In this document: positions 14,050 through 62,489 of the stretch, in pieces
Layout of the letters: each line of letters opens with the position of its first letter
How positions within the stretch are numbered: position 1 is the first letter of the stretch
From: Octopus sinensis
Lineage: Eukaryota
Reading direction: 5' to 3'
Length of the DNA: 64,000 nucleotides
NCBI RefSeq assembly: GCF_006345805.1
Contig: NC_043015.1
Coordinates: 47,120,001-47,184,000 of the forward strand
Notes under the pieces: generated by a model
The model's database searches: none
Told to the model about the DNA's origin: nothing
Seen by the model: the letters and a program-made list of their open reading frames with translations, nothing else
Position numbers and translations under genes: made by a program

Positions 14050-14467
14050 AAAATCGATCAAAATGAATGGAAATTGTAGCTGTGATACCAGTGCTGGTGG
14101 CACATAAGAGAACCATCCGAATGTGGCCGTTGCCAGTGCCACCCTGAGTGGCTTCCGTGCCGGTGGCACGTAAAAAGCACCATCCGATCGTGGCCGTTAC
14201 CAGCCTCGCCTGGCCTCCGTGCTGGTGGCACGTAAAAAGCACCATCCGACCGTGGCCGTTTACCAGCCTCATCTGGCACCTGTGCCGGTGGCACGTAAAA
14301 AGCACCCACTACACTCACGGAGTGGTTGGCGTTAGGAAGGGCATCCAGCCGTAGAAACATTGCCAGATCAGACTGGGCCTGGTGCAGCCTTCTAGCTTCA
14401 CAGACCCCAGTTGAACCGTCCAACCCATGCTAGCATGGAAAGCGGACGCTAAATGATGATGATGATA
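14050..14467 (+). mobile_element. retroposon family B
   Basis: Four GGTGGCAC modules, core and (GAT)n tail. Confidence 0.8.
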
Positions 14468-14861
14468 TAACTACCTGAAGCTCATTATACAAATGTTGCA
14501 CAATGGACTCTCCTGAGCATAGCTAGTCGTTAGGTTGAAATTACCTCAGTGAAGTTTACCTTACTCTTTTTACTCTTTTACTGGTTTCAGTCATTTGACT
14601 GTGGCCACGCTGGAGCACCGCCTTTTAGTCGAGCAAATCGACCCCAGGACTTATTCTTTGTAAGCTTAGCACTTATTCTATCGGTCTCTTTTGCCGAACG
14701 CTGGGGTTGGATGGCAAATATTGATGTGAATGCCTATGGGTGGCAGCAGAATTTGTACCTTGGAGTTACTTCAGCCTTATCTCCCTCTGTAACCCTTTCC
14801 AACTCTGCTTTCTGTTTCTAATTCTTTCCAAATCCTCTTCCCTACCATCCAATGGTTTGAT

Positions 14862-15350
14862 ATCATCATCATCATCGTTTAACATCCGTTTTCCGCGCTA
14901 GCACGGGTTGGACGGTTCGACCGGGGTCTTGGAAGCCAGGGGCTGCTCCAGGCTCCAGTCTGATCTGGCAGAGTTTCTACGGCTGGATGCCCTTCCTAAC
15001 GCCAACCACTCCGCGAGTGTAGTGGGTGCTTTTTACGTGCCACCTGCACAGGTGCCAGGGGTGTCCGGCATCGGTCACGATCGGTTGGAGCTTTAACGTG
15101 CCAGCGGCACGGAAGCCAGCCAAGGTGGCGCTGGCAATGTTCGGATGGTCTTTTTTATGTGCCACTGGAACAGGGGCCAGTCGGGGCGGCGCTGGCATCG
15201 GCTACGTTCGGATGGTGCTTTTTACGTGCCACCGGCACAGAAGCCAGTCGGGGCGGTGCTGGCATTGGCCACGTTCGGATAGTGCTTTTTATGTGCCACT
15301 GGCACAGGCATCATAACTACTATTTCCATTGATATTTATTTCGACGATAC
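14862..15350 (-). mobile_element. retroposon family B
   Basis: Inverted relative to 14050-14467; about five modules. Confidence 0.8.
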
Positions 15351-16510: not shown

Positions 16511-17359
16511 TATATATATATATATATATATGAGTAGTATAGAATGTGGACTCAGATAATCATGTAGATATCACAGGAAGCTCTTCTTAGGAGTTGGCTA
16601 TCATTTTTCATAGTAATCAATAACAAAGAAATGTAATGTAGAGTGTTCATGTAACTGAAAATCCACAAAATCCAATTGAAATTATTTTATGAGTAGTATA
16701 TAAAACCATAAAGTCAGGAGATACGAGAAGTAAATATATGTTTATTTAACCATGTGTCTTCCATAGGGTCATGGTTGTTTCACAACCTTCTTTATGTAGT
16801 GTTAATTTCAGCATGGAAGAAATTGTGCATACATGTTTGCATTAATATGTATGTTCAGACTTATACAATATAAACTGATGCAAACAAAGACAGTTAATGC
16901 ATTAGATTACCAGAACATTATGCTTACATCAATAATTCGACTTGAAATATAGATACAAAATTTCTGTTAAGACATATGCAATGTATGGAAGACCAAACTG
17001 GACAAAATTAAATTGATTTGATCAGTAAGAAGAGGAAATAAAAATAACGCAAAAAATAAATAGCATAAAAGTATATAAAAAATAAAAGCAAATAATATAA
17101 ATGAATTTTTAGCCAAAGTAATTATATATATAGATGGGTAAGTGGGGAATGACAAATCTGGAGATTTAAAGATTCCACAGAAATCATGGGTGAATGATTG
17201 GTCAAGTAAAACTAAGAAATAGTATTCAACGATAGTAAATGAGGTCAGAATACCTCATAGAAATTAAATTGAATATTATTAATTAACATGATGTTAAGGA
17301 GATCCATTGAGTCAAGTACACCAACCTTGAGGAGATCCATTGAGTCAAGTACACCAACA

Positions 17360-17634
17360 TCAAAAATCATTGGAAACTGCAGTTGTGATCCCTGTGTTGG
17401 TGGCACGTAAAAAGCACCATTCGAACGTGGCCGATGCCAGTGCCGCCTTGACTGGCTTCCATGCCGGTGGCACGTAAAAAGCACCCACTACACTCACGGA
17501 GTGGTTGGCGTTAGGAAGGGCATCCAGCTGTAGAAACACTGCCAGATCAGACTGGAGCCTGGTGCAGCCTCTTGGCTTCCCAGACTCTGGTCGAACCGTC
17601 CAACCCATGCTAGCATGGAAAACGGACGCTAAAC

Positions 17635-17665
<31 letters not shown>
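17360..17665 (+). mobile_element. retroposon family B
   Basis: Two modules, core and (GAT)n tail. Confidence 0.8.
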
Positions 17666-17667
<2 letters not shown>

Positions 17668-18118
17668 GATTATAAGATGTCACAATCCTAAGGACATACC
17701 TAACCATGGATTAACTTATGAGAGACACACTGATAAACTTTATGGAAATTGAATATTTTCCTGTTCAACGATGACCATAAATTGGTTTCCCATTTGTAAT
17801 GGATAATGTATTACACTCCCAAGACTTAGCAGTTTTTTGCAAGAGAAACTGATAGAATAAGTGCTGGATACAGACAGAATGGAGTCGATTTGCTTGACTG
17901 AATCCCTCAAGGCAGCATACACAGTTTAATGACTGAAACAAATAAAATAGTACAAGTATATATATGTATGTATACACACACACACGTGCATGCACGCACA
18001 CGCACATGCACACACACAAGGATATATAGGGAGAATTCACAAAAAAGGCAAAAGACGAAGACAGGTGGTGTAGACAACAAACAGATGTATTAGTTTAATG
18101 CTCGGGAAGTGAAAAAGT

Positions 18119-18208: not shown

Positions 18209-19146
18209 TAGGGTGTATAAGATATTCGAGGACAGATTTATGTTTATAAAAAACAGATATGTAATAACAGATAATTATTTATGAAAAATACTATGAGGAT
18301 AAAAATAAACCTTTTCTATAATGTTATTCAATAAAGCCACCTTCAGCTTCAGCACCTGCTTCTATATGAGATCTAAATCATCTACATGCTCAAATCAAGT
18401 GGTCCTGGTTCATTTTGGACATTACTCTGACTATGGCAGCTTTCAAAGAATCTTTGGTGTTATAGGCATGCTCATTGACCTCTTTCTCAACACTCCACAT
18501 GTAATAGTCCAATGGATTGAAATCTGGGGAATTAGGAGGCCAAATGTTAGGGATTATGTGATCATGAAAATTTTCAGCCATCCATTCCTGTGTTACTAGA
18601 GCCATGTGTGATAGTGCAGAGTCTTACTGAAACATATATGGCCTTCCATTGCATACACTGTCTATCCAGGGTTTAATTATTTCCAGGACCTCAATGTAGG
18701 CAGCAGAGTTAACTCTAAGGCCTTGTGGAATGAAGTAAGGAGGCATCACATGTTCTTCATTGCTGACAACCCCTAAAACCTTGACAGTTGCAGGAAGTTT
18801 TGTATGCATGACACTTGGAACTTCAGAAGGGTCTGCACATAACCATCTGTCATTTCTTCTGTTAACTTTTTGATCTTGGTCAAAGTTTTTCTTGTTTGAG
18901 TAAAACCAAATCAAATCTTCTTCTGTTGGATTTTTCTGTTTGTTTAAGAGCCTTTTAAGTCTGATGTAGTGATTTTCTTTTGCTTTTTCTGACAAATTGA
19001 TCTTTCCTCATCATATAAGACTTATATCTGATGTCTTCCTGGACAACATTTCTGACTGTTCCTTCTGACACATGGAGATCTTTTGCAATTGACCTCATGG
19101 ACTTTCTGGGATTGTAATGGTCTGTTGAACAACTGGAGGGTTGCAT
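18209..19146 (-). pseudogene. maT (DD37D) Tc1/mariner transposase remnant
   Basis: HTH part SMRSIAKDLHVSEGTVRNVV, then NRRNDRW...VLGVVS, then FQ*DSAL...WPPNSPDFNPLDY. I count exactly 37 residues between the second and third D. Confidence 0.92.
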
Positions 19147-19990
19147 CAGGTGTGCATCTTGCTGTCATCTTTCACTGGCGGCCCACATTACATGCACAAA
19201 AAGAACTCAAGACGCAATGACATACATTCGCTACTACGGGCGTCCTGACTTATTTATCACCTTCACCTGTAATCCTAGGTAGGGGGAGATTGAAATAGAA
19301 CTTTTTCAGAGTCAGCAGGCCAAAGACAGACATAATCTCATTGAGCGGGTCTTCCATTTGAAGTTACACGAACTCATGAACTTCATCACCAAAAGCCAAA
19401 TATTTGGCCCCGTGCGATGCGACATGTATACTGTCGAATGGCAGTCTTCCTCATGCTCATATCCTAATTTGGTTATCCACATGGATTGCATTTGATGCAA
19501 TCGACAATTTGATCTCAGCCAAGTTCCCTGACCCCTCTATTGGCAGGACTCTCTTTGAGACAGTGAAGACTAACATGATCCATGGTCCCTGCAGACGAGG
19601 ATTCAGCCTTCAATCGCCTTGCATGAAAGGGTCAGTTTGCAGCAAGAAATACCCAAAACAATTCCTCCAGGAAACACAATCCGGGCATGATGGGTACCCT
19701 CTGTACAGATAAAGGAAACCAGAGGACAGTGGATTCACAGCACAAGTTGGCCCCTATGTAGTAGACAACAGATGGATAGTGCCTTACTGCCCAATCCTGT
19801 TAAAGGCATTCAATGCTCACATAAATGTCGAGCTCTGCATTTCTGTAAAGTTCATCAAATATGTGTGCAAGTACATCAACAAAGGCTCTGATGCTGTTGT
19901 GTTTGGCCTGCAACCAGATGGAGTCCACGATACCAAGTAGGCAGGTACATAAGTAATAATGAAACCTTCTGGCGCATGCTGGAAGGTTGC
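19147..19990 (+). pseudogene. Helitron Rep (HUH endonuclease) remnant
   Basis: SFTGGPHYM...QDAMTYIRYYGRPDLFITFTCNP, VEWQ..LPHAHIL (HUH), MIHGPC, GYPLYR, DNRWIVPY, YVCKYINKGSD, GRYISNNETFWR. Confidence 0.93.
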
Positions 19991-20055
19991 ACTAAATTCC
20001 AGTCTGATTTGGTAATGCATACATACTTATGTATTTATTTTATTTGTTGCATATG

Positions 20056-21065
20056 TTAATGACATAGATGCCAACTTAAAGAATGCCAAAGTGCTGAAAT
20101 ATGCAGATGACATCAAGCTGTACCTCGAAATAAAAAGGTCAGATCCTGTACACTATAGATCTCTATTGCAATCAGACCTGGACACAATGCAGCAGTGGAT
20201 CATGGACTGGCAACTCAACCTGGCAGTGGACAAATGTACCACCATGCATTTTGGGAGGAAAAACCCAGCGTCTACTTACTCCCTCCACAACACTAATCTC
20301 AAAAAGTCTTCTTGTGAACGTGACCTGGGTGTTATTGTCGACACTGATTTGTGTTGGACAAAACACATCGCTAAAATTGCCAAGAAGGCTGAGGGTGTCT
20401 TGGCATCACTCACCAAGTCCTTTGTGAGCCGCTCTCCGGCTATCTATCTGCGGCTTTATATAGCTATGGTGCGACCTCATCAGGAATTTGCATCACTGGT
20501 CTGGAACCCCTATCTTGCCCAGGATATTAATCATCTGGAAGCTGTTCAGCGACATGCAACCATGAGAATACCCTCCATCAGGCATTTGCCATAATCTGAA
20601 CGCCTTACTTCCCTGGACATAGACACATTGAAACTCCAACGTCTGGCAGCTGACTTGGCAGAAACCCATAAAATTATTAACCATCTTACAAACAATAACT
20701 CTGAGCATCTTTTCAAACTCCACCCGTCTAACACCCGTGGACATGTTTACAAAGTCAGAAAACAGCACAGCTCCCATGACTTTCGGAAAAAAATTTCATG
20801 ATCTAAGAGTTGCTGAAGCATGGAACACAACTGCCGGCATCAGTTGTAGTTGTCGGAGCAATGCATCCTTCAAAACTTCCATGCTTCCTGAAATTCGCCA
20901 ACACTACACCTGATTTTCTACCCTCCATTCACATGCAAGCATGTATCTGACTCGTACATTGTTCGCTTTCCAGACATTTGTACATTACTGCATATGCTTT
21001 ATATGCACTTTTGACAAGTTGTGGTGCACCTGAGCACTGTATACAATAATTTCATTATTATTATA
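20056..21065 (+). pseudogene. CR1/L2-type LINE, 5'-truncated (RT C-terminus plus 3' UTR)
   Basis: YADDIKLY, N..KC..MHFG, ERDLGV, YIAMVRPH.EFA..VWNPY, LEAVQR.AT; (ATT)n tail. Another 3' end lies at 34852-35100 (-). Confidence 0.92.
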
Positions 21066-32742: not shown

Positions 32743-32819
32743 TACATATATATATTGATAGAAATGACAAGACAACAAAAGAATGAAAGAGAACTCGGTA
32801 TTATGTAAATAGAGGAATT

Positions 32820-32920
32820 TATCTGTAAATATAATATGTGACTGTTATTCGGTAGCCATGATAAAACTCAGAGTTTTATCATGGCTACCGAATAATTGTC
32901 ACATATTATATTTACAGATA
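32820..32920. repeat. 50-bp hairpin palindrome with 1-nt loop
   Basis: Arms 32820-32869 and 32871-32920 are 48/50 complementary. The unfolded family member lies at 53430-53570. Confidence 0.92.
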
Positions 32921-32921
32921 T

Positions 32922-32968
<47 letters not shown>

Positions 32969-33472: not shown

Positions 33473-33545
33473 TACCTCTGATGGGACTCAAACCCACAAT
33501 CCCCAGTTTACGAAGCTGGTGCCTTATCCACTGGGCCACGGAGGC
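33473..33545 (-). tRNA. tRNA pseudogene, Arg(CCT)-like scaffold, anticodon now CGT
   Basis: 73 nt: GCCTCCG-TGGCCCAGTGGATAAGGCA-CCAGC-TTCGTAA-ACTGG-GGATT-GTGGG-TTTGAGT-CCCAT-CAGAGGT-A. One mismatch each in the acceptor and anticodon stems; TTC mutated to TTT in the T-loop. Confidence 0.75.
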
Positions 33546-33589
33546 TTCACACACTGGGCCACGGAGGCTTCACACACTGGGCCACAGTA

Positions 33590-34410
33590 TGCATAAATGC
33601 ATGCATGCATGTATGTATGTATGTATGTGTGTATGTATGTATGTATGTATGTATGTATGTATGTATGTATGTATGTATGTATGTATGTATGCATGTATGT
33701 ATGCATGTATGTATGCATGTATGTATGTATGAATGTATGTATGTATGTATGCATGCATGTATGTATGTATGTATGTATGTATGCATGTATGTATGTATGT
33801 ATGTATGTATGCATGTATGTATGTATGTATGTATGTATGCATGTATGTATGTATGTATGTATGTATGTATGTATGTATGTATGCATGCATGTATGCATGT
33901 ATGTATGTATGCATGTATGTATGTATGTATGTATGTATGCATGCATGTATGTATGTATGTATGTATGTATGTATGTATGCATGTATGTATGTATGTATGT
34001 ATGTATGCATGTATGTATGTATGTATGTATGCATGTATGTATGTATGTATGTATGTATGTATGTATGTATGTATGTATGTATGCATGTATGTATGTATGT
34101 ATGTATGTATGCATGTATGTATGCATGTATGTATGTATGAATGTATGTATGTATGTATGCATGTATGTATGTATGTATGTATGTATGTATGCATGTATGT
34201 ATGTATGTATGTATGTATGCATGTATGTATGCATGTATGTATGTATGCATGTATGTATGTATGTATGTATGTATGTATGTATGAATGTATGTACCTGTAT
34301 ATAGGTACCTGTGTATGCATGTATGTATGTACATGTGTATATGTGTATGTATGTACATGTATATGTATGTATGTATGTACATGTGTATGTATGTCTGTAT
34401 GTATGTATGT
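33590..34410. repeat. about 800-bp (TATG)n/(CATG) array
   Basis: Directly visible; source of the MYVC and HTYI ORFs. Confidence 0.97.
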
Positions 34411-34851
34411 CTGTAGGTACCAGAACCAGAGGCAGACCTTGTTTTGTGTAGATGGATGGAGTGAGGAAAGCTTTGGTGGTCAGAGGTGTTGGAGTGAGAG
34501 AGACAAGAGAGTTTACAAATGATAGGAAAGCTTGCCTCTTTGAGCTGGGAAATGAATGGAATACCTGGTGTGTGTCTTGTGGCTACCCACTCAAAATATG
34601 AGGAATAGGCTTGGGTATATATATTATTTAATCAGCAGACATTGCAAAGTCACTCAATTGCTGAGTGTTTCGTGTGAGTGTGAGTGTGAGTGCCAGTCTG
34701 GAAAACTCAATTTTGTCAAACCATCTGCACATTTGATTTGTTTATTGTGATCAACTGTATATGCTGTACATTAGCTCATCCCTCCATCAAATTGACACTA
34801 CCTGATCAGGTGCACGGTGTACTGCACATCAGTTGTTGAAGTAATCATAAT

Positions 34852-37695: not shown

Positions 37696-37860
37696 ACATT
37701 GTAAAATACCTTAGGAATGAGAACCCGGGTTCGAAATTTTCCCAAGACACCTGAAGAAGGCTGGAGGGTATATCAGCCGAAACGTTGTGTTAACAACACA
37801 CAAGATGAGGACAAATATCTGCCAAATGTAAATAATGTACATAATTCCTCATCTTCCAGA
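37530..37860 (+). mobile_element. chimeric element: tRNA-derived head, (TAA/TAG)n, then Penelope-like terminal segment with hammerhead
   Basis: A box TGGCATAGTGG, B box GTTTGATTCC, microsatellite, then the hammerhead at 37746. Confidence 0.65.
37746..37791 (+). ncRNA. minimal type I hammerhead ribozyme
   Basis: GACAC-CTGAAGA-A-GGCTG-(10 nt)-CAGCC-GAA-AC-GT-T-GTGTT. Stem I 5 bp, stem II 5 bp, palindromic stem III ACGT. Confidence 0.75.
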
Positions 37861-38564: not shown

Positions 38565-38879
38565 ACTTTTTCTATTCCTGAGTGCTATACTAATACATCT
38601 GTTTGTTTTGTACACCACCTGTCTTCATCTTTTGTTTTTTTCGTAAACTTTCCCTATATATATATATATATATATCCCTCTCTCTCTCTTTCGGAGAGAC
38701 ACTGAACAGCTATATGCACACATACACACACGGCAGTAACTTCCACCTACCGAATTCAATCACAAAGTTTCGGTCGGCTCGGGGCTATAGCAGAAGACAC
38801 CTGCCCAAAGTGCCACGCAGTGGGACTGAACCTGAAACCATGTAGCTAGGAAGCAAGCTCCCTAACCACACAGCCATGC

Positions 38880-39499
38880 CCATGGCCTCCGTGCTGGTGG
38901 CACGTAAAAAGCACCATCCGACCGTGGCCGTTGCCAGCTTCGTCTGGTCCCCGTGCCGGTGGCACGTAAAAAGCACCATCTGATCGTGGCCGTTGCCAGC
39001 CTCGCCTAGCACCTGTGCTGGTGGCACATAAAAAGCACCATCCGATTGTGGCCGTTTGCCAGCCTCGCCTGGCCCCCATGCTGGTGGCACGTAAAAAGCA
39101 CCATCTGACCGTGGCCGTTTGCCAGCCTCGCCTGGCCCCCATGCTGGTGGCACGTAAAAAGCACCATCTGATCGTGGCCGTTGCCAGCCTCGCCTAGCAC
39201 CTGTGCTGGTGGCACGTAAAAAGCACCATCTGACCGTGGCCGTTTGCCAGCCTCGCCTGGCCCCCGTGCCAGTGGCATGTAAAAAGCACCATCTGACCGT
39301 GGCCGTTTGCCAGCCTCGTCTGGCACCTTGCTGGTGGCACGTAAAAATGCACCCACTACACTCACGGAGTGGTTGGCGTTAGGAAGGGCATCCAGCTGTA
39401 GAAACACTGCCAGATCAGACTGGGCCTGGTGCAGCCTTCTGGCTTCCCAGACCTCAGTTGAACTGTGCAACCCATGCCAGCATGGAAAGCGGACGTTAA

Positions 39500-39545
<46 letters not shown>
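38880..39545 (+). mobile_element. retroposon family B with seven tandem 62-63-bp modules
   Basis: GGTGGCAC(G/A)TAAAAAGCAC-type motif at 38896, 38958, 39020, 39083, 39146, 39208, 39271 and 39333. Confidence 0.88.
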
Positions 39546-39546
<1 letters not shown>

Positions 39547-40091
39547 ATATATATAATATATATACATCGTATGGTATAAACCTGGTAGTTTGGTGGCAAA
39601 GCACATTCACTAGCTTAGTGTTTGTTGGGTGTGTAATTATTGAGAGAGACAAAAGAAGGAAAATACAAGAATCTTTATTGAAACATACAATTATTTCAAT
39701 CCATCAAGCATTGATCCTTCACAGGTGGGATATACTAAACATCTAGTTTAGGCATATAGCTTGGTGTAGATATGTTTCCTCAGATGATTTGAAGAGGTAT
39801 CTCATTAAAACTGTTTCACACAACTTATTTCTGGATGTTTTTTCTTAGCCTTCTTATACAGAAATAGCAAATTAAGAGACATATTTTCATTCTTATCTTT
39901 GTTATGGCTCTTCTATAAGAATGAAGATGTATCCTTTAATTTGCTATGTGGGTGATGACAGTACTGCCTGATTGGCACCCATGCCAGTGGAATGTTAAAA
40001 GCACATACACGCATGATCGTTGCCAGGGCCATGGATTGGCTCCCATGCTGGTGACATGTGAAAAGCACCATTCAAGCGTGCCTTACCAGCA

Positions 40092-49034: not shown

Positions 49035-51110
49035 ATTACTATTATTATTACTGTTGTTTTTTTTCTTCTTTCTTCAAATTTTCTTCCATTTCTCACCGAG
49101 TATTTTCCGTACACCTAGGGCAGAGAAGCTCATTGTATGCATTCCCAGGTTACACACGCAAATTCACAGGTAAAAATATGTATTTAAAAAATTAATAAAT
49201 AAATAAATTCATGAATGGATGTTGTTTTCACAGTGATAATGCTCTTCTCAGTACATGAGTCGTTCCAGTTAACACGATTTTTTGCACTTCCTGTAGGGAT
49301 GGTAAGCCTGGTATCATTTTCAAGTAGGTTTCAGTACCTTTTTTTTTTATCATTTCTAGAGATCCTACAATCACTGGTACTGTAGTCGCCTTGAGATGCC
49401 ACATTTTAAAAATTTCTATTAGCAAATCTTTATATTTACTGATCTTGTCAAATTCTATTATTGTTGTTGTTGTTGTCGTTGTCGTCGTCGTCGTCACCAT
49501 CATCATCATCATCATCATCATCACCACCATCACCATCATCATCATCATCATCATCATCATTATTATTAGGTGGCAAGCTGGCAGAATTGTTAGCATGCTG
49601 GACAAAATGCTTAGAGGAATTTCGTCTGTCTTTATCATCTGAGTTCAAATACCTCTGAGGTCGACTTTGTCTTTCACCCTTTCAGGGTCAATAAATTAAG
49701 TACCAGTCAAACACTGGGACTGTGTAATCGACTTACCCGCTCCCACCAAGTTTTAGGCCTTGTACCTATAGTAGAAAGGATTATTATTATTATTATTGCT
49801 ATTTACCAAATGTTCTGCCATGTTCTTCTTTCACTGTTGATGCACTCCCATATGCTAATCAGCCCACATGTATCTTTACCCGTCTTCATGTAGGGCTTGT
49901 GTACATTTGCCTTAGGTTGGAGGGCACCATACATTGTCATTGTCTTTTGGATAGTGTGATTGAGTTGGTTAATCTCTGCTTGTATCCATTATAGGATGGG
50001 TGCACTATAGCAGTTTAGGTGCAGTATAGCAGTTTAGGTGCAGTATAGCAGTTTAGGTGCAGTATAGCAGTTTAGGTGCACTATAGCAGCCCATATGTTG
50101 ATGGCAGTTACAAGGTTCCTTGAGTTGAGTTTTGATTTCAAGAGAAGCTTGATGTGCTTCAGATATGCAGTGGTGACCTTGTCTTTCATTTCTCTGTGCA
50201 AGATATCGTCCAACTCCAGGATCCCAAGGTACTTGTACCCATCAACATCTGGGTCTTCCATTCTGTCTCCGTTTGGCAATTCTATGCCCCTACAATCTGC
50301 TCTTTTCCTCTGTTTCAAAGTGAGCACCATATACTTCAAGATACTAAATTTCATCTCTGTATCCTTGCTACACATCTGCACAGTCTCAACCAGCCTCTCC
50401 ATTTCAGGCTCTGTTTTTGTGAACAGTTTTAAATCATCCCTGAAGAGAAGGTGCTTGAGACGAGGTCCATTCCTTCTCAGTTCATAGTGTGCATTGACTT
50501 TGCATAGGACTACAGAAAGTGGGATCAAGGCTATAACAAATAACAAAGGTGAACGAGAGTCTCCTTGGAAGATACCTCTTTTGATTGTTACCTCGGCTAA
50601 GAGCTGGTTGTTACAATAAAAGATGCGTTTTCCAACTAGGTACACTGTTTTTAATTAGTGTATACACACACTCCACTATTCCACACATTCCTATTGTTTC
50701 CAAAATCCATGAATGCAGCAACATATCACAAGCCTTTTTAAAGTCTATCCAGGCCATGCACAAGTTCTTTTGGTACCATTTGCAGTTCTTCATTGCAACC
50801 TTGTCTATCACAAAGTGGTTCTTGGTGCCCTTGAATCCTTTTTGGCATCCTTTTATCTTCTACTGCAAGTAGATTGTTTTCTGCAAGAAGTGTATATATT
50901 TTTCCTGTGAAGATGCCTGCTAACACGTTCCATAGGAGGTTAAGACAAGCAATGGGTCGGTAATTGCCAGCCTCGTTGCCCTTTGACCGATCTTTCATTA
51001 AAAATGTTGTCTTTTCCTCTACAATCCACTCCGGAACTGCACTATTGTGCAGGCAAATATCTAATTGCAACCACTTGAGCCAGAGGAAGTAGCCTTGAAT
51101 TGCTTTTATT
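49035..51110 (-). pseudogene. R4/Dong-like non-LTR retrotransposon (RT plus RLE C-terminus, internally deleted, SINE-interrupted)
   Basis: NYRPIACL, AWIDFKKA.D..HSWI, GIFQGDS.SPLLF, HLLF.DDLKL, YKYLGI, AIN.WA, then KISKYKDLLIEIFKMW...VPVIVGSL...QKIVLTGT.HVLRR*. (TAA)n on both flanks. Confidence 0.9.
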
Positions 51111-51156
51111 ATCACTATTATTATTATGATTATTATTATTATGATTATTATTATTA

Positions 51157-51191
<35 letters not shown>

Positions 51192-51193
<2 letters not shown>

Positions 51194-51270
51194 TTTTTTT
51201 TTTCTTCTTTCAAATTTGCTTCCATTTCTTGCCGAGTGTCTTCCCGACTCCTAGGGCAAAGAAACTCATA
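51192..51270 (-). mobile_element. second 3' terminus of the same R4/Dong-like family
   Basis: Matches 49050-49130 (CTAGG...CTCGG...AATGGAAG..AATTTGAA.AGAAGAAAAAAA). Confidence 0.7.
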
Positions 51271-53428: not shown

Positions 53429-53606
53429 CGAAATGGCAAGATAACAAAAGAATAAAAGAAACCATGATATTATGTAAATAGAGGAATTTATTTGTAAATA
53501 TAATATGTGACAATTATTCGGAAGCCATGATAAAACTCTGAGTTTTGGATGTCAGGGTGGAAACCCACCTTTTTTATTCACATACATGAATATATTTCAG
53601 CTGATC

Positions 53607-53639
<33 letters not shown>

Positions 53640-53652
53640 TTAGCTGGCAGAC

Positions 53653-53708
53653 TTGGCTGATGAGAAATCACACGCCTAGGTGGCATTAAATTTCGAAACC
53701 GGTACTGA
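53653..53708 (+). ncRNA. minimal type I hammerhead ribozyme, fully canonical core
   Basis: TTGG-CTGATGA-GAAAT-(21 nt)-ATTTC-GAA-ACC-GGT-A-CTGA. G10.1-C11.1 pair present, palindromic stem III ACCGGT, GUA triplet. Confidence 0.8.
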
Positions 53709-53989
53709 ATTGACCAGCATTTATTTGTTCTGACCCATTTGAGGTAAGACATTATTATTGTTCACTGATATTTTTTCCTATCTTGTCTGTAATGGATTTG
53801 TGACTATTCGGTGGTACAGAAGTATTTTTCAACTTCTATCTTTGGCGATATAGGTACCTTTATGTATATATAGTACCCTTATGTATATATGTACATATTT
53901 AATATTGTATGTATATATTTTATTAATTTGCCTGTACGCCTAATAATTCGCTTACTGCTTGTGATGGTATTTTAATAATACCATTCCTA

Positions 53990-54033
<44 letters not shown>

Positions 54034-54377: not shown

Positions 54378-54514
54378 GCTGTCTTTATAACAAATTGTGT
54401 TGGCTCTGAAAAATACAAGGGAAATAACTCTATTCGAACTTATTTGTCCTAGTCAGATAGGCAATAAATTAGACGACCTGAGATGCAGGCATTCCAGCTT
54501 TTGTTATCTTTTAG

Positions 54515-54631
54515 ATGGTATTGTTGTTACGTTACTCCTGCAAGCTGATCTCTCGGGTCTCTTTCTTCGTGTGCATTCTTTGCACTGCTTTCAGACTGAA
54601 CGCTGTCATTTCTCACGCCGAAAGCAATAAC
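54515..54631 (+). CDS. candidate first coding exon of a secreted or membrane protein (signal-peptide-like)
   Basis: MVLLLRYSCKLISRVSFFVCILCTAFRLNAVISHAESNN: 39 codons exactly bounded by CTTTTGTTATCTTTTAG| and |GTAAGT (phase 0). Non-repetitive context. Product not identifiable. Confidence 0.55.
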
Positions 54632-55672
54632 GTAAGTACCTTGGTGTATCTAATTGTCAGCCCACCTTTAATAGATAAAGAAAAAAATGAAAGAAATTAT
54701 GGGAAGAAGAAAAAAGAGAGAAGGGAAATTTAAACGTGCGATGTCTATCTATCTATCTACCTACCTATCTATCTATATCTATCTATCTATCTATCTATCT
54801 CTATCTATCTATCTCTATCTATCTATCTATCTATCTATCTAAGTACATGACAAAGGAATATAGTGTAAAATTATTCTCATTTAAAACAGCATACACACCT
54901 ACACATACATACATAAGTATATATAACGAGGTGTTGAAACAGAAAATTGATAATAAACAAAATATAGAAACGAGTACACTCTCCTAATTATTTATCGTAC
55001 AAGGGAATACCGTTATTCTCCCCTTTAAAGCATTTTTCAGGTAAGCCGAAACCCGATATTACTGCGGATAATAACTAAACTGGTGTGCTAGAACAACCAG
55101 GAACCCTCACGTACATCTTACTATACTTTGGGTGTGTGTTTGTGTGTAGCAATGTAAGATACCGTGAGCAACCGGTGAAGTCTGCTACTGTTTTAACGTA
55201 TTTAGTTTCTGTTTGGCTCCAGGTCAGCTCAGGTAGGCCCATAAAGGCCCTAAGCACCTAAAAGATTTTGGTGCTCCCATATATACGTAATTCAAAATAT
55301 AAACAATTATAAACCATACATTTTCTTTTCAGTTTTCAGAATGAAACAAAACTATGTTTATTTTTTATATAACCCCGCTTTATTTAAATTCAAAGTTTTC
55401 TCCTCACTATGACACCATGAACACTTCGAAATTATAATCTCAGAATCCATTTCAAATATAATTTCGGTATGTCTAAAGTGATTCCTTTTTTACTATAAAT
55501 CATTTATCATTTCTGTGGTGCCCCCTGCTTCCCTTGAAGGCCCTAAGCACGCGCTTACTTTGATTAACGGCTAATTAAGCACGAGATATACGAAACATAT
55601 GCTGAAAGGCATTCTGATAGTGACCGACTCGTCCTTGTTTTATTACGCACACACACACTCAAATAAATATAT

Positions 55673-55705
<33 letters not shown>

Positions 55706-56882
55706 GATTCCTTTGGTGTATGTGGTTGCATTTTTATCTTATAAAGGTTCCCTACACACTAGATGTTGTTTTAGCCCCAGCGCCACCATAATCAAGCAGA
55801 TCTATGATCAAAAACATTCCGGTCGTGACCCTCCCATCATTTTTCAGATGTGTAGGAGTACCTTATTCCGTCTGGGTGTGATTAAGAGTGATACTGATTG
55901 CTATTTCTTGCAGATCAAGTAACAAGCACTTAGAGGTTCTCTCGCTGATTCTTTAAAGTACTTGACAACTTCTTGGGTAGATTTATCTTCAGCGTTCTAA
56001 TCCAGCGAAGGTCAACATTGCATCCGCCTCGCTGGGGGTCGATAAGATACAACAATAGTCAAGTCATCAGTCTAATATATTTATAAAACACCCTGTATTT
56101 CTATAAAGAAGATTAATTCGTGGCCCATCTCCCCAATTTTGGGGTTTTGCTTCTGTGTAAGAATTTATTGTTTCCGTGTACGGAACTAAGCACTTTGGTC
56201 TGTCATATACCCTCCTCTGCCTACCGTAGAATAGTTCCTTCCCCATTCCTCGAGCTAAGCAAGTGCTCGAAACTTAAGTACCCGACAAGGAGGAGGAGGC
56301 AGAGTAGTAATAATAATAGTAGTTGTTGTGCTCGACTGCATCACGTACCACCAGTAGGCGAGATGATGATTTGAGCTTCGCGCTCGACTGCTAGAAATAG
56401 CAGCCAAATTTCCTTCACCCCCAACCTCCGTCTTTTTTTTTTTTTTTGGAAGGATGCATTTAGTGCATTTAGACACGGTAACATGGTATTACTAGCTATA
56501 CCGAAGGGCGGAATGGTCAAAGCTGGAATGCCTTAGATCTGCTCAAAGATGACTTGGTGTTACACAAGCAAACAAACCACAACCAGGCAGCCTCTACATG
56601 ACCGCATGATTTATTAGAAACAGCAGCTAAACATTTATACGGTCCTCTACCGTCTTAAATAAAACCCATAATAATAAAACACATCGGATAATGCTGGTTT
56701 AACAGTACAGTGCTTTTGACAAGGTCCTGCAGGCGCGACAAATCGACAATATTATGATACACTCTGGTTTCCACAGGGACCGTGTATGTACATGATGTTC
56801 TGTTCAGTCGGTTCATGGGGTAATGCACCGAAAATGTTTTTTGGAAACTCTATTAGAAATAACCGGCGAAGTTTCGCATGTC

Positions 56883-57817
56883 GTAGCTCAGATTTCCGTC
56901 GATTTCCGTAAAAAACTTTTATTTTTTTACATAAGTAATGAGAGCGAAAGAGACTAAGAGGAAGCGATTTTATGACGAGAAGGTTTCTCTTTGAAGTCGG
57001 CCTGTGTGTGTTTGATGGGGTGTGGGAGACAGTATGTTGTGTAAGTGAAGTGCTTCTGTTAGTGTGTGCGAAGAGACAGAGAGAGTAATGTGTGAAAGAG
57101 AGAGATAACTGATTTTTTACTCGGTGTATGTGTATATGTATGTATGCATGTATGTGTGTGTGTGTGTATCTATGTATGTGTGTGTGTGTAAGTATGTGTG
57201 TGTGTATGTATGTATGTATGTATGTGTGTGTGTATATGTATGTATGTGTGTGTGTGTGTATGTATGTATGTATGGCCGATTCATCGTAATTTTTTACTCG
57301 GTGTAAGTGTATATGTATGTCTGCATGTATGTGTGTGTGTGTATGTATCTATGTATGTGTGTGTGTGTATGTATGTATGTGTGTATGTATGTATGTATGG
57401 TCGATTCAGTGTAATTTTTTACTCGGTGTATGTGTATATGTATGTCTGCATGTATGTGTGTGTGTGTATGTATCTATGTGTGTGTAAGTATGTGTGTGTG
57501 TATGTATGTATGTATGTGTGTGTGTATGTATCTATGTATGTGTGTGTGTGTATGTATGTATGTATGTATGGCCGATTCATCGTAATTTTTTACTCGGTGT
57601 ATGTGTATATGTATGTCTGTCTCTTCGCACACACTAACAGAAGCACTTCACTTACACAACATACTGTCTGTCTCCCACACCCCATCAAACACACACAGGC
57701 CGACTTCAAAGAGAAACCTTCTCGTCATAAAATCGCTTCCTCTTAGTCTCTTTCGCTCTCATTACTTATGTAAAAAAATAAAAGTTTTTTACGGAAATCG
57801 ACGGAAATCTGTGCTAC
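56883..57817. mobile_element. foldback-like element: about 200-bp inverted arms around a TTTTTTACTCGGTG-(TG/TATG)n minisatellite
   Basis: Arms 56883-57080 and 57616-57817 are near-perfect (one 4-bp indel, one mismatch seen); four internal units. Confidence 0.85.
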
Positions 57818-57886
57818 TACAACCGAAACTATGCCAAATAACCTACTATGGCCACCGAATTGAATGTTGAAGGACAGGTACATCTC

Positions 57887-60208: not shown

Positions 60209-60672
60209 GCTAGTCATGACTAATCGATCCTTACTTTGTGTTTTTGTGTTTTATTTACTTTGTTTAAAAAAATTATTTACTTTCATCATCATCATCATCA
60301 TCGTCATTTAACGTCCGCTTTCCATGGGTTGGACGATTTGACTGAGGTCTGGTGAACCAGGCTCCAGTCTGATCTGGCAGAGTTTCTACAGCTGGATGCC
60401 CTTCCTAACGTCAACCACTCTGAAAATGTTGTGGGTGCTTTTACGTGCCACCGGCACGAGGGCCAGTTTGGTGGTACTGGCAATGGCCACGCTCAAATGG
60501 TGCTTTTTACATGCCACCTGCACAGGAGCCAGTCCAGCGGCACTGGTGACAACCTCGCTCGAATATTACTTTGTTTAACAAAAATTATTTACTTTGCGTA
60601 AAAAAATTATTTATTTTGTGTTTTATTTACTTTGCTAGATAGTCGTTGTAGGATCGACTAGTCACGACTAGC
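60209..60672. mobile_element. TA-flanked MITE with nested family B copy
   Basis: TIR GCTAGTCATGACTAATCGATCCT / AGGATCGACTAGTCACGACTAGC with TA on both sides; family B at 60285-60565 (-). Confidence 0.7.
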
Positions 60673-61244: not shown

Positions 61245-62489
61245 TGCGGGCATTAAGGCACGTACTGCAGTACATCTTGAGAAAGCATTTTATATACATG
61301 TATAGTATTTTAGATTGTCTAATGGAATTAAAAATTATTTTTATGCATTTGTGTACATTTACACTAATTAAATATTATTTTACTGAATAATATAATTAAA
61401 ATTTCTTTGATTAAAACCCTTTTTAACATGGAAGTATCCAAAGAGCATTTGAGGCACATAATGCTTTATGAGTACAAAAAAGGAAACTCTACAGCTGAAG
61501 TGACTTGGGAAAGAATGCTTGAATGAAAGAACTTGCAGAAAATGGTTTGCAAAATTCAGAAGTGGAGATTTCAGCCTTGAAGATGAAGATCGAATAGGAT
61601 GTCCAGTTGAGTTTGATGATAAGCTCCTTGAGGCATTACTTGGAGAAAATCTTGCATTATCAGTTGAAGAATTGGCAATAAAGCTTAGTTCAAACCATAC
61701 AACTGTTTGTCATCATCTTCAGCAACTTGGAAAGGTTCCTAAACTTGAAAAATGGGTGCCGCAAATTCCGAGTTGACATCTGCTATTCTCTCCATTCTCG
61801 CGAACTTGTTTCACCTTTTTAGGATAGACTTGTGACTGATGATGAAAAATAGATCTTCTATCGAAATGTTAAATGTCGTAAACAGTGGCTTGGTAAAAGG
61901 GAAAAAGCTCAACCACAACCAAGAAGGGAACTTCATGGGAAAAAGGTTCTTCTCTCTATCTGGTGGGATTGCAAAGGAGTAATTCACTTTGAATTGTTAC
62001 CACCTAATGCAGCAATCAATGCTCAAGTCGACAGTCAGCAATTAGAGCGTTTGAACCAAGCTTTGAAGAAAAAAAACCCACTTTAGTGAAACGAAAACGA
62101 GTGATATTTCATCAGGACAATGTGCAACCCCACACTGCAAAGATCACATCACAGAAGATCGAAGACGCTGGTTGGGAAAAAATTCCTCATCCACCTTATT
62201 CTCCCAACCTTGCTCCTTCAGACTACCATTTGTTTCATAGTTTACAGAATTATTTCGGGAACATAACTTTTATAAGCCAGAAGGAAGTCGAAACTGTTAA
62301 TTCAGAGTTCTTCGCTTTGAGACCAAAAGAGTTTTACATTGATGGGATTAAAAAGCTTGTAAATAGATGGAAGGAAGTCATAGATAATCAGGGAAAGTAC
62401 ATTGATGATTAAAATTTCAATTAAATATAACATTTGATCACTTGTTTTCTTTATTCAAAATTTTGAACAGAACTTATAGGATGACTTGA
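61245..62489 (+). pseudogene. mariner (DD34D) element, near full length, transposase 61428-62412 disrupted
   Basis: MEVSKEHLRHIMLYEYKKG, KWFAKFRSGDFSLED, KWVP, TDDEK, HQDNVQPH...YSPNLAPSDY (34 residues between the second and third D). Right TIR AGAACTTATAGGATGACTTGA-TA. Confidence 0.93.

What the first reader, a model, noticed from the sequence alone, without database searches (positions are those of the whole stretch)
53653..53708. Fully canonical minimal hammerhead ribozyme about 700 bp upstream of the candidate promoter
Seen: CUGAUGA, G-C closed 5-bp stem II, GAAA, zero-loop palindromic stem III (ACC/GGT), GUA cleavage triplet and a 4-bp stem I with two G-U pairs. No ORF or SINE explains it. 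It has the same polarity as the candidate exon at 54515. Inference: if an upstream 5'UTR intron or read-through transcript spans it, it could cleave the pre-mRNA.
Basis: partly seen in the sequence, partly recalled or inferred. Interest (0 to 1): 0.72.

Follow-up and report, generated by a model that had tools for sequence, protein, structure and literature searches.

The report
Solitary minimal hammerhead motif in octopus DNA
The hammerhead ribozyme motif is really there and is too complete to be a likely accident, but it is the helix-III-less kind scattered through animal genomes by Penelope-like retroelements and retrozymes, so it is probably an inert relic and not a regulator of a nearby gene.

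Summary
The motif is present exactly as described at 53653-53708 (+). Its parts are UUGG, CUGAUGA, GAAAU-21 nt-AUUUC, GAAA, CCGG and UA^CUGA. A closing stem, GCUGG..CAG / UUG.CCAGC, extends helix I to 53643-53718.

In a composition-matched background the loose descriptor is expected 1.5e-3 times per window, about 63 times per 2.7 Gb. With a G10.1-C11.1 pair, helix II of at least 5 bp and U7 the figure falls to about 0.3 per genome. The palindrome and the closing stem lower it further.

The window is Octopus DNA. A second motif with the published hallmarks of Penelope-like-element hammerheads lies at 37746-37791. It sits in a ~146-bp repeat that has a 92.5% copy at another O. bimaculoides locus, so this genome carries hammerhead-bearing repeats.

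The candidate is best read as a solitary minimal type I hammerhead left by a retroelement. It has no workable helix III as a monomer and no partner copy, and its catalytic fold lies 4.7 kcal/mol above the minimum-energy fold. No relative of it was found, and no tool here searches Octopus genomes by DNA. The pre-mRNA-cleavage idea has no support. It is a new member of a known kind and of low interest.

The parts
53643..53656 (+). Helix I, 5' strand: outer GCUGG (53643-47), CAG (53648-50), unpaired AC (53651-52, loop 1) and inner UUGG (53653-56)
   Evidence: The extension adds -10.3 kcal/mol, and 1.6% of natural flank pairs do as well.
53657..53663 (+). Catalytic core C3 U4 G5 A6 U7 G8 A9 (CUGAUGA)
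53664..53694 (+). Helix II, GAAAU/AUUUC: 5 bp, one G10.1-C11.1 pair plus four A-U pairs, closing a 21-nt loop 2 (53669-89) that can form an inner GCC/GGC stem
53695..53698 (+). Core G12 A13 A14 and A15.1 (GAAA)
53699..53702 (+). Palindromic CCGG. It is either loop 3 on a 1-bp helix III or, with A15.1 and U16.1, the self-complementary ACCGGU that two copies could share as a 6-bp helix III
   Evidence: The ACCGGU self-duplex is -8.3 kcal/mol. The dimer model comes from PMC4209133.
53703..53704 (+). U16.1 and A17. The predicted scissile bond lies between 53704 and 53705 (GUA^C)
   Evidence: using the established hammerhead numbering
53705..53718 (+). Helix I, 3' strand: CUGA (53705-08), unpaired A, UUG (53710-12), bulged A and CCAGC (53714-18)
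53601..53640 (.). (TG)n(TA)n microsatellite ending 2-3 nt before the extended helix I. It forms the left edge of the ~350-bp unique unit 53641-53987
   Evidence: Penelope-like elements insert preferentially into microsatellites (PMC8557442).
53988..54031 (.). (TA)22 microsatellite, the right edge of the ~350-bp unit
37746..37791 (+). Second, independent minimal hammerhead motif: GACAC, CUGAAGA, bulged A, GGCUGG-8 nt-UCAGCC, GAAA, CG, UU^GUGUU
   Evidence: Its minimum-energy fold is the hammerhead fold.
37696..37841 (+). ~146-bp repeat unit carrying the second motif, placed directly after an (AAT)n(AGT)n microsatellite
   Evidence: A 92.5% identical copy lies at L003:16286-16432 (O. bimaculoides CM046617.1), also directly after (AAT)n.

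Best explanation
The sequence at 53643-53718 (+) is a solitary minimal type I hammerhead motif. It belongs to the class carried by Penelope-like elements (PLEs) and their non-autonomous relatives, the non-LTR retrozymes, and it most likely arrived as part of such an element inserted in a (TA)n microsatellite.

Hammerheads of this class have almost no helix III of their own. In multimeric or tandem transcripts, two copies pair through the palindrome around positions 15.1-16.1, here ACCGGU. This builds a shared helix III (a double hammerhead). Each core then cleaves 3' of H17, here between 53704 and 53705, leaving a 2',3'-cyclic phosphate and a 5'-OH. That reaction trims retroelement RNA to unit length.

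At this locus there is one copy, no partner, a weak AU-rich helix II with a long loop, and a more stable competing fold. The expected present-day activity is therefore none or negligible. It is a relic and not a working regulator.

Shown: the motif, its helices, its rarity under a background model, and the presence of another hammerhead-bearing repeat family in the same genome. Inferred: its retroelement origin, the dimer mechanism and its present inactivity.
For: - Every invariant core position is present, along with helices I and II.
- Features that were not needed to find it match natural hammerheads. These are the G10.1-C11.1 pair, the palindromic 15.2-16.2 region, and a 4-bp helix I followed by an internal loop and a closing stem (p about 0.016). 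PMC4209133 lists the G10.1-C11.1 pair and the palindrome as marks of non-random motifs.
- The chance expectation for this quality is about 0.3 per 2.7-Gb genome or less, before the palindrome and the closing stem are counted.
- A helix III of one base pair capped by a palindromic tetraloop is the architecture of the amphibian/axolotl HHR_Amex1 hammerheads, which cleave as dimers (PMC7229834).
- The window is Octopus DNA.
- The same window holds a second minimal hammerhead with the published PLE hallmarks: an unpaired base after A9, a 6-bp helix II, a 5-bp helix I and a palindromic CG. It sits inside a repeat with a 92.5% copy at another O. bimaculoides locus. Hammerhead-bearing repeats are therefore evidently frequent in this genome.
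- Both motifs abut microsatellites, which are the preferred PLE targets.
- The unit between the flanking (TA)n tracts is about 350 bp and about 32% G+C. That matches the size and composition reported for mollusc retrozyme monomers: 350-390 bp and under 45% G+C.
Against: - No relative of this particular sequence was found in the window, in 41 kb of O. bimaculoides DNA, or in the metagenome, prokaryote and viral collections. Family membership, the criterion used in the literature, is therefore untested.
- No PLE ORF or other protein domain lies nearby, and there is no tandem repeat.
- It lacks the unpaired base between A9 and G10.1 and the 6-8 bp helix II that are typical of PLE motifs.
- Its 21-nt loop 2 is unusual for any natural hammerhead.
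- No Rfam hammerhead model matches it even at E<=10. The family-supported second motif is missed as well, so this test has little power.
- The catalytic fold is not the predicted minimum-energy fold.
- The features used for the strict chance estimate were chosen after the motif had been seen.
Confidence: 0.62

Rival explanations
1. Chance match: AT-rich, repeat-rich non-coding DNA happens to spell the 13 or so fixed hammerhead positions with pairable flanks, and there is no evolutionary link to any ribozyme.
For: - The loose descriptor is expected about 63 times per 2.7-Gb genome, and one strict hit turned up in 200 Mb of simulated sequence.
- The published searches also discarded motifs that fell into no family.
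- No related copy was found.
- The long AU-rich helix II and loop, and the more stable competing fold, are what a random match would look like.
- Pattern hits in the metagenome and viral collections were plain chance matches.
Against: - With the canonical extras (G10.1-C11.1, helix II of at least 5 bp, U7) the expectation drops to about 0.3 per genome. The palindrome (about 0.26) and the closing stem (0.016) reduce it to below 0.01.
- A second, family-supported hammerhead in the same 64 kb shows that real motifs are common here.
Confidence: 0.25
2. One reading: a host-used, cis-acting hammerhead that cleaves a transcript of the downstream gene, in the manner of the intronic HH9/HH10 hammerheads of amniotes or the 3'UTR hammerhead of rodent Clec2.
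For: It has the same polarity as the ORF at 54515, and the core is intact.
Against: - The monomer has no helix III and there is no partner copy. Single helix-III-less motifs are inactive in vitro.
- The catalytic fold is disfavoured.
- The ORFs at 54391-54984 match no Pfam family at or above threshold.
- The surroundings are microsatellites and transposon debris.
Confidence: 0.05
3. A box C/D snoRNA-like element: UGAUGA (53658-63) as the C box, CUGA (53705-08) as the D box, and GCUGG/CCAGC as the terminal stem.
For: The only Rfam matches over the motif are weak ones to archaeal C/D sRNAs (sR12 at 9.4 bits, E=4.7; sR35 at 7.4 bits). A terminal stem exists.
Against: - The scores are far below the gathering thresholds of 38 and 60 bits.
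- The bases next to the boxes do not pair, and the stem lies 9 and 5 nt away from them.
- There are no D' or C' boxes.
- The 52 nt between the boxes is short for a eukaryotic snoRNA.
- No eukaryotic snoRNA family matches.
Confidence: 0.03

Closest known systems
Minimal type I hammerheads (min-HHRs) in the pseudo-LTRs of Penelope-like elements (Cervera & de la Pena 2014, PMC4209133)
   Same: - Canonical core
- G10.1-C11.1 pair
[quoted passage not shown]
- No real helix III, with a palindromic 15.2-16.2 region, which implies action as a dimer
- Mostly found as scattered single copies
- Next to a microsatellite
   Different: - No unpaired base between A9 and G10.1
- Helix II is 5 bp and AU-rich with a 21-nt loop, instead of 6-8 bp with a short loop
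- No PLE ORF or second pseudo-LTR within 64 kb
- No family copies found

The second motif in the window (37746-37791) fits this family much better.
Amphibian satellite-2 / axolotl HHR_Amex1 hammerheads of non-LTR retrozymes, and mollusc (Mytilus) retrozymes (Cervera & de la Pena 2020, PMC7229834)
   Same: - Type I topology with no bulge after A9
- Helix III of one base pair capped by a palindromic tetraloop, cleaving as a dimer
- The host unit is about 350 bp and low in G+C, like the 330-390 bp retrozyme monomers
   Different: - Retrozymes occur as tandem repeats with one hammerhead per unit, whereas this is a single unit with no tandem copy
- The loop 1/loop 2 tertiary-contact nucleotides cannot be recognised
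- Loop 2 is far longer
Conserved intronic and UTR hammerheads of amniotes (Rfam HH9 RF02275, HH10 RF02277; rodent Clec2 3'UTR hammerhead)
   Different: Those have a stable helix III and recognisable tertiary contacts, are conserved across species, and are active as monomers. None of the Rfam hammerhead models matches here, and no gene context is evident.
Box C/D snoRNAs
   Same: They share the UGAUGA and CUGA boxes and a terminal stem.
   Different: There is no stem next to the boxes, no internal boxes, and only sub-threshold matches to archaeal models.

Membership tests
Hammerhead ribozyme (any type) | Invariant core: C3 U4 G5 A6 N7 G8 A9, G12 A13 A14, an A15.1-U16.1 pair, and H17 (not G) at the cleavage site | tested here: met
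   CUGAUGA at 53657-63, GAAA at 53695-98, U at 53703 and A at 53704
Hammerhead ribozyme (any type) | Helices I and II flank the core, with helix II starting at G10.1-C11.1 | tested here: met
   Helix I has 4 bp plus 8 further bp beyond an internal loop. Helix II has 5 bp starting with G-C.
Hammerhead ribozyme (any type) | Helix III closes the three-way junction within one molecule | tested here: not met
   Only A15.1-U16.1 plus a CCGG loop is possible, because a zero-loop ACC/GGU hairpin is sterically impossible. A 6-bp helix III forms only between two copies (ACCGGU self-duplex -8.3 kcal/mol). This is the known situation for minimal and dimeric hammerheads.
Hammerhead ribozyme (any type) | Match to the Rfam covariance models (RF00163, RF00008, RF02275-RF02277) | tested here: not met
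   No hammerhead match at the gathering score, or at E<=10 in 800 nt or in 91 nt. The test has low power, because the family-supported minimal hammerhead at 37746-37791 is missed too.
Hammerhead ribozyme (any type) | The catalytic secondary structure is the favoured fold | tested here: not met
   The hammerhead-compatible fold is -13.9 kcal/mol against a minimum of -18.6 kcal/mol, and makes up about 7e-5 of the ensemble. Nearest-neighbour models ignore core tertiary energy.
Hammerhead ribozyme (any type) | Site-specific self-cleavage giving 2',3'-cyclic phosphate and 5'-OH ends | not testable with these tools
   Needs an in vitro transcription and cleavage assay, or end mapping.
PLE-type minimal hammerhead (min-HHR) | Unpaired nucleotide between A9 and 10.1 | tested here: not met
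   A9 is followed directly by G10.1. The feature is present in the second motif (A at 37758).
PLE-type minimal hammerhead (min-HHR) | Enlarged helix II (6-8 bp) and short helix I (4-5 bp) | tested here: inconclusive
   Helix I of 4 bp fits. Helix II is 5 bp with a 21-nt loop.
PLE-type minimal hammerhead (min-HHR) | Palindromic 15.2-16.2 region, and loop 3 if present | tested here: met
   CCGG at 53699-702
PLE-type minimal hammerhead (min-HHR) | Lies in the pseudo-LTR of a Penelope-like element, with an RT plus GIY-YIG ORF nearby or a truncated copy of one | tested here: not met
   No PLE-like ORF appears in the window's ORF lists. ORFs within about 3 kb have no Pfam domain. The only RT fragments found have LINE-type RT motifs and match Pfam RVT_1. 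A short 5'-truncated tail cannot be excluded.
PLE-type minimal hammerhead (min-HHR) | Belongs to a multi-copy consensus family in its genome, with covariation in the stems | tested here: inconclusive
   No copy in the 64-kb window or in 41 kb of O. bimaculoides DNA. The whole genome could not be searched.
Non-LTR retrozyme | Tandem repeats of 170-400 bp, each with a type I hammerhead | tested here: not met
   The unit between the (TA)n tracts is about 350 bp, but it occurs once. There is no tandem or dispersed second unit.
Box C/D snoRNA | C box (RUGAUGA) and D box (CUGA) brought together by an adjacent terminal stem, plus internal D'/C' boxes and a guide region | tested here: not met
   The boxes are present. 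However, the flanking bases do not pair, no internal CUGA or UGAUGA exists, and only sub-threshold archaeal matches were found.

The most novel reading that the evidence does not exclude
The motif is a domesticated, single-copy hammerhead kept by octopods. It would cleave a host transcript either as an RNA-RNA dimer through its ACCGGU palindrome or with a protein chaperone, so that cleavage depends on transcript concentration. That would make it an invertebrate counterpart of the amniote intronic hammerheads.
Probability: 0.03. Interest if true: 0.6.

Novelty: new member of a known kind. Interest (0 to 1): 0.25.

Why it matters
If the reading is right, it adds cephalopods to the animals whose genomes are seeded with helix-III-less hammerheads from Penelope-like elements or retrozymes. 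The two full-text searches of the held literature for hammerhead ribozymes in octopus or cephalopods returned no title or abstract reporting one. It also shows that the Rfam hammerhead models miss this class altogether. It does not change the present understanding of ribozymes or of gene regulation.

The practical lesson concerns how to score such motifs. A lone hammerhead consensus in a large animal genome should be judged by family membership and by helix III, and not by the core alone.

Tried and rejected
- Rfam was run at the gathering score on the whole window and at E<=10 on 800-nt and 91-nt stretches. No hammerhead family matched. The result was judged uninformative once the family-supported second motif was also missed.
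- BLASTN of 53431-53990 against the window and against the fetched loci found no copy of the hammerhead unit. Only the upstream 116 bp (53431-53546) has a relative, at 32762-32877.
- Exact-product look-ups of window ORFs, including the antisense ORF that spans the motif, found nothing on record.
They yielded a single O. bimaculoides locus (L003). An ENA contig reached through (L004) shared no similarity with either hammerhead region.
- Pattern scans were run on three collections:
  - metagenome contigs: two hits, both plain chance matches in coding-like sequence
  - prokaryote genomes: no hits
  - viral contigs: one hit, with no helix I.
- The tandem retrozyme reading was rejected because there is no tandem repeat.
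- The box C/D snoRNA reading was rejected.
- A tiny terminal-inverted-repeat (MITE-like) reading of GCTGGCAG...TTGACCAGC was considered and dropped, because the repeats are only 5+2 bases long.
- An attempt to score the double-hammerhead dimer with nested constraints is invalid, because that structure is not nested. Only the ACCGGU duplex energy is used from that call.
- My first simulation timed out.
- Supplements of the two key papers are not held, so no published minimal-hammerhead alignment was available as a positive control.

Full report
**What is there.**

In hammerhead numbering:
- C3-A9 is 53657-63.
- Helix II runs from G10.1 (53664) to C11.1 (53694).
- G12-A14 is 53695-97.
- A15.1 is 53698, U16.1 is 53703 and A17 is 53704.
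- The scissile bond would lie between 53704 and 53705.

A descriptor I wrote for helix-III-less type I hammerheads finds this site and no other on either strand of the window.

Ten more bases on each side extend helix I beyond a small internal loop: GCUGG-CAG-(AC)-UUGG pairs with CUGA-(A)-UUG-(A)-CCAGC, spanning 53643-53718. This adds -10.3 kcal/mol, and only 1.6% of flank pairs drawn at the same spacing from the window itself do as well.

**Is it chance?**

- A 200-Mb second-order Markov simulation gave one hit to the loose descriptor.
- A more efficient simulation used 12 million samples conditioned on the core, from a third-order model trained on the window plus 41 kb of Octopus DNA. It gave the following expectations:

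| Requirement | Expected per 2.7 Gb |
|---|---|
| Loose descriptor (1.5e-3 per 64-kb window) | about 63 |
| plus G10.1-C11.1 | 3.9 |
| plus helix II of at least 5 bp | 1.4 |
| plus U7 | 0.3 |

- No sample also carried a palindrome between A15.1 and U16.1.
- From base composition I estimate a factor of about 0.26 for the palindrome. With 0.016 for the closing stem, the expectation falls below 0.01 per genome.

Two caveats apply. The extra features were chosen after the motif had been seen, and a Markov model is only an approximation of a repeat-rich genome. Even so, the bare consensus is common enough to occur by accident in a large genome, while this particular instance is not.

**What kind of hammerhead.**

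A zero-loop ACC/GGU hairpin cannot form. What remains is one A-U pair capped by the palindromic tetraloop CCGG or, between two copies, a 6-bp ACCGGU/ACCGGU helix (-8.3 kcal/mol). This is a known architecture:
- Most metazoan type I hammerheads have a 1-2 bp helix III with a small palindromic loop and act as dimers.
- The 'min-HHR' of Penelope-like elements has none at all (PMC4209133).

PMC4209133 lists features that argue against randomness: membership of genome-wide families, an unpaired base between positions 9 and 10.1, the G10.1-C11.1 pair, and the palindromic 15.2-16.2 region. The candidate has the last two, lacks the unpaired base, and could not be tested for the first. Its helix II (one G-C pair plus four A-U pairs, closing a 21-nt loop) is atypical for every described family.

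**Rfam.**

No hammerhead model matches at the gathering score, or at E<=10 in 800-nt or 91-nt searches. This would count against the candidate, except that the second, family-supported motif described below is also invisible to Rfam. The models evidently do not cover this class.

**Context.**

- The window is Octopus DNA. A LINE-type reverse-transcriptase ORF at 50037-50654 (-) has as its best relative an O. bimaculoides protein at 66% identity.
- The neighbourhood consists of microsatellites, SINE-like repeats and LINE fragments.
- No ORF within about 3 kb of the motif matches a Pfam family at or above threshold. This includes the 'candidate exon' ORF at 54515-54730.
- The motif begins 2-3 nt after a (TG)n(TA)n tract, and the next (TA)22 tract starts at 53988. 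It therefore sits at the left end of a ~350-bp, ~32% G+C unit between microsatellites.
- PLEs insert preferentially into microsatellites, (TA)n among them (PMC8557442).
- Mollusc retrozyme units are 350-390 bp. The unit here occurs once and not in tandem.

**A second hammerhead in the window.**

I widened the descriptor to allow an unpaired base after A9. This turned up 37746-37791 (+): GACAC, CUGAAGA, A, GGCUGG[8 nt]UCAGCC, GAAA, CG, U, U, then GUGUU.
- It shows the published PLE hallmarks: a bulged base, G10.1-C11.1, a 6-bp helix II, a 5-bp helix I, a palindromic CG and no loop 3.
- Its minimum-energy fold is the hammerhead fold.
- It lies in a ~146-bp unit (37696-37841) with a 92.5% identical copy in the only other Octopus DNA I could fetch, L003:16286-16432 from O. 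bimaculoides CM046617.1.
- In both places the unit follows an (AAT)n-type microsatellite directly.
- The other copy has lost the core (GAAA to GAAG, and CG to CA), as expected for a decaying element.

This genome therefore does carry hammerhead-bearing repeats at appreciable density. That raises the prior that the candidate is one of them. The two motifs are unrelated in sequence, and their palindromes (ACCGGU and ACGU) could not pair fully with each other.

**Would it work here?**

- Single min-HHR motifs gave no detectable self-cleavage in vitro. Dimeric, trimeric and helix-III-extended constructs gave only weak cleavage.
- The candidate has no partner copy.
- The competing fold, in which G2.1-C3-U4-G5 pairs with C15.3-G16.3-G16.2-U16.1, is 4.7 kcal/mol more stable than the best hammerhead-compatible structure. 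The latter makes up about 7e-5 of the ensemble, although such models ignore the tertiary energy of the core.
- The expectation is therefore no or negligible cis-cleavage, and the pre-mRNA-cleavage idea is unsupported.

**Search for relatives.**

- Nothing related to the candidate was found in the window, in L003 or L004, or in prokaryote genomes.
- Metagenome contigs gave two chance hits, and viral contigs gave one hit that lacks helix I.
- None of the tools here searches Octopus genomes by DNA, and the three protein searches reached only one Octopus locus.
- Family membership, the decisive criterion, remains untested.

**Verdict.**

My probabilities are:

| Reading | Probability |
|---|---|
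| Solitary, dimer-type minimal hammerhead left by a PLE or retrozyme-like element, inert on its own | about 0.6 |
| Chance match | about 0.25 |
| Host-used cis-cleaving ribozyme | about 0.05 |
| Box C/D-like RNA | about 0.03 |

It is a new member of a known kind and of low interest.

Noticed in passing
window 37696-37841 (+), hammerhead at 37746-37791; L003:16286-16432: A second minimal hammerhead with the PLE hallmarks (bulged A after A9, 6-bp helix II, palindromic CG, GUU^G site) sits inside a ~146-bp repeat. The repeat follows an (AAT)n/(AGT)n microsatellite directly in both copies seen. The O. bimaculoides copy is 92.5% identical but has a mutated core. This may be an abundant short element of octopus that targets microsatellites.
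   Followed up: partly
window 53431-53546, 32762-32877 and 32863-32923: A ~116-bp repeat starts right after a (TA)n tract. It has an 89% copy at 32762-32877 that folds back on itself (the inverted arm 32923-32863 is 95% identical). Both copies abut microsatellites. It may be another microsatellite-targeting element, or the end of one, just upstream of the candidate hammerhead.
   Followed up: partly
window 33473-33545 (-): A tRNA-Thr (CGT) gene (Rfam 50 bits, and found by ARAGORN) abuts a ~900-bp compound (TATG)n-type microsatellite (about 33550-34500), read from its repetitive ORF translations.
   Followed up: no
window 56865-57032 and 57668-57835: A 168-nt inverted repeat, 96% complementary, encloses 635 bp of (TATG/TGTG)n microsatellite with internal ~300-bp direct repeats. 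It looks like a foldback or MITE-like structure.
   Followed up: no
window 49231-51250 (-), 20016-20591 (+), 61504-62409 (+), 18393-19164 (-): Transposon debris. There are LINE reverse-transcriptase fragments (Pfam RVT_1; best relative an O. bimaculoides protein at 66% identity). The 61504-62409 stretch carries mariner-type transposase fragments (best relatives named SETMAR-like), and 18393-19164 looks like a transposase by eye only. All have broken reading frames.
   Followed up: partly
window 14050-15330, 17250-17710, 38785-39600, 60340-60600: A recurring repeat translates as '...LQSDLAVFLQLDALPNANHSVSVVGAFYVPPA...' followed by ~60-bp tandem units (AFYVPPAWGPGEAGKRPRSDG). It appears to be a dispersed element with an internal minisatellite, present at least four times in the window.
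   Followed up: no
window 54515-54730 (+): The 'candidate exon' ORF named in the finding matches no Pfam family at or above threshold (best is Dsl1_C at 15 bits against a cut-off of 30). It runs into a (TCTA)n microsatellite. Nothing supports it as coding.
   Followed up: partly
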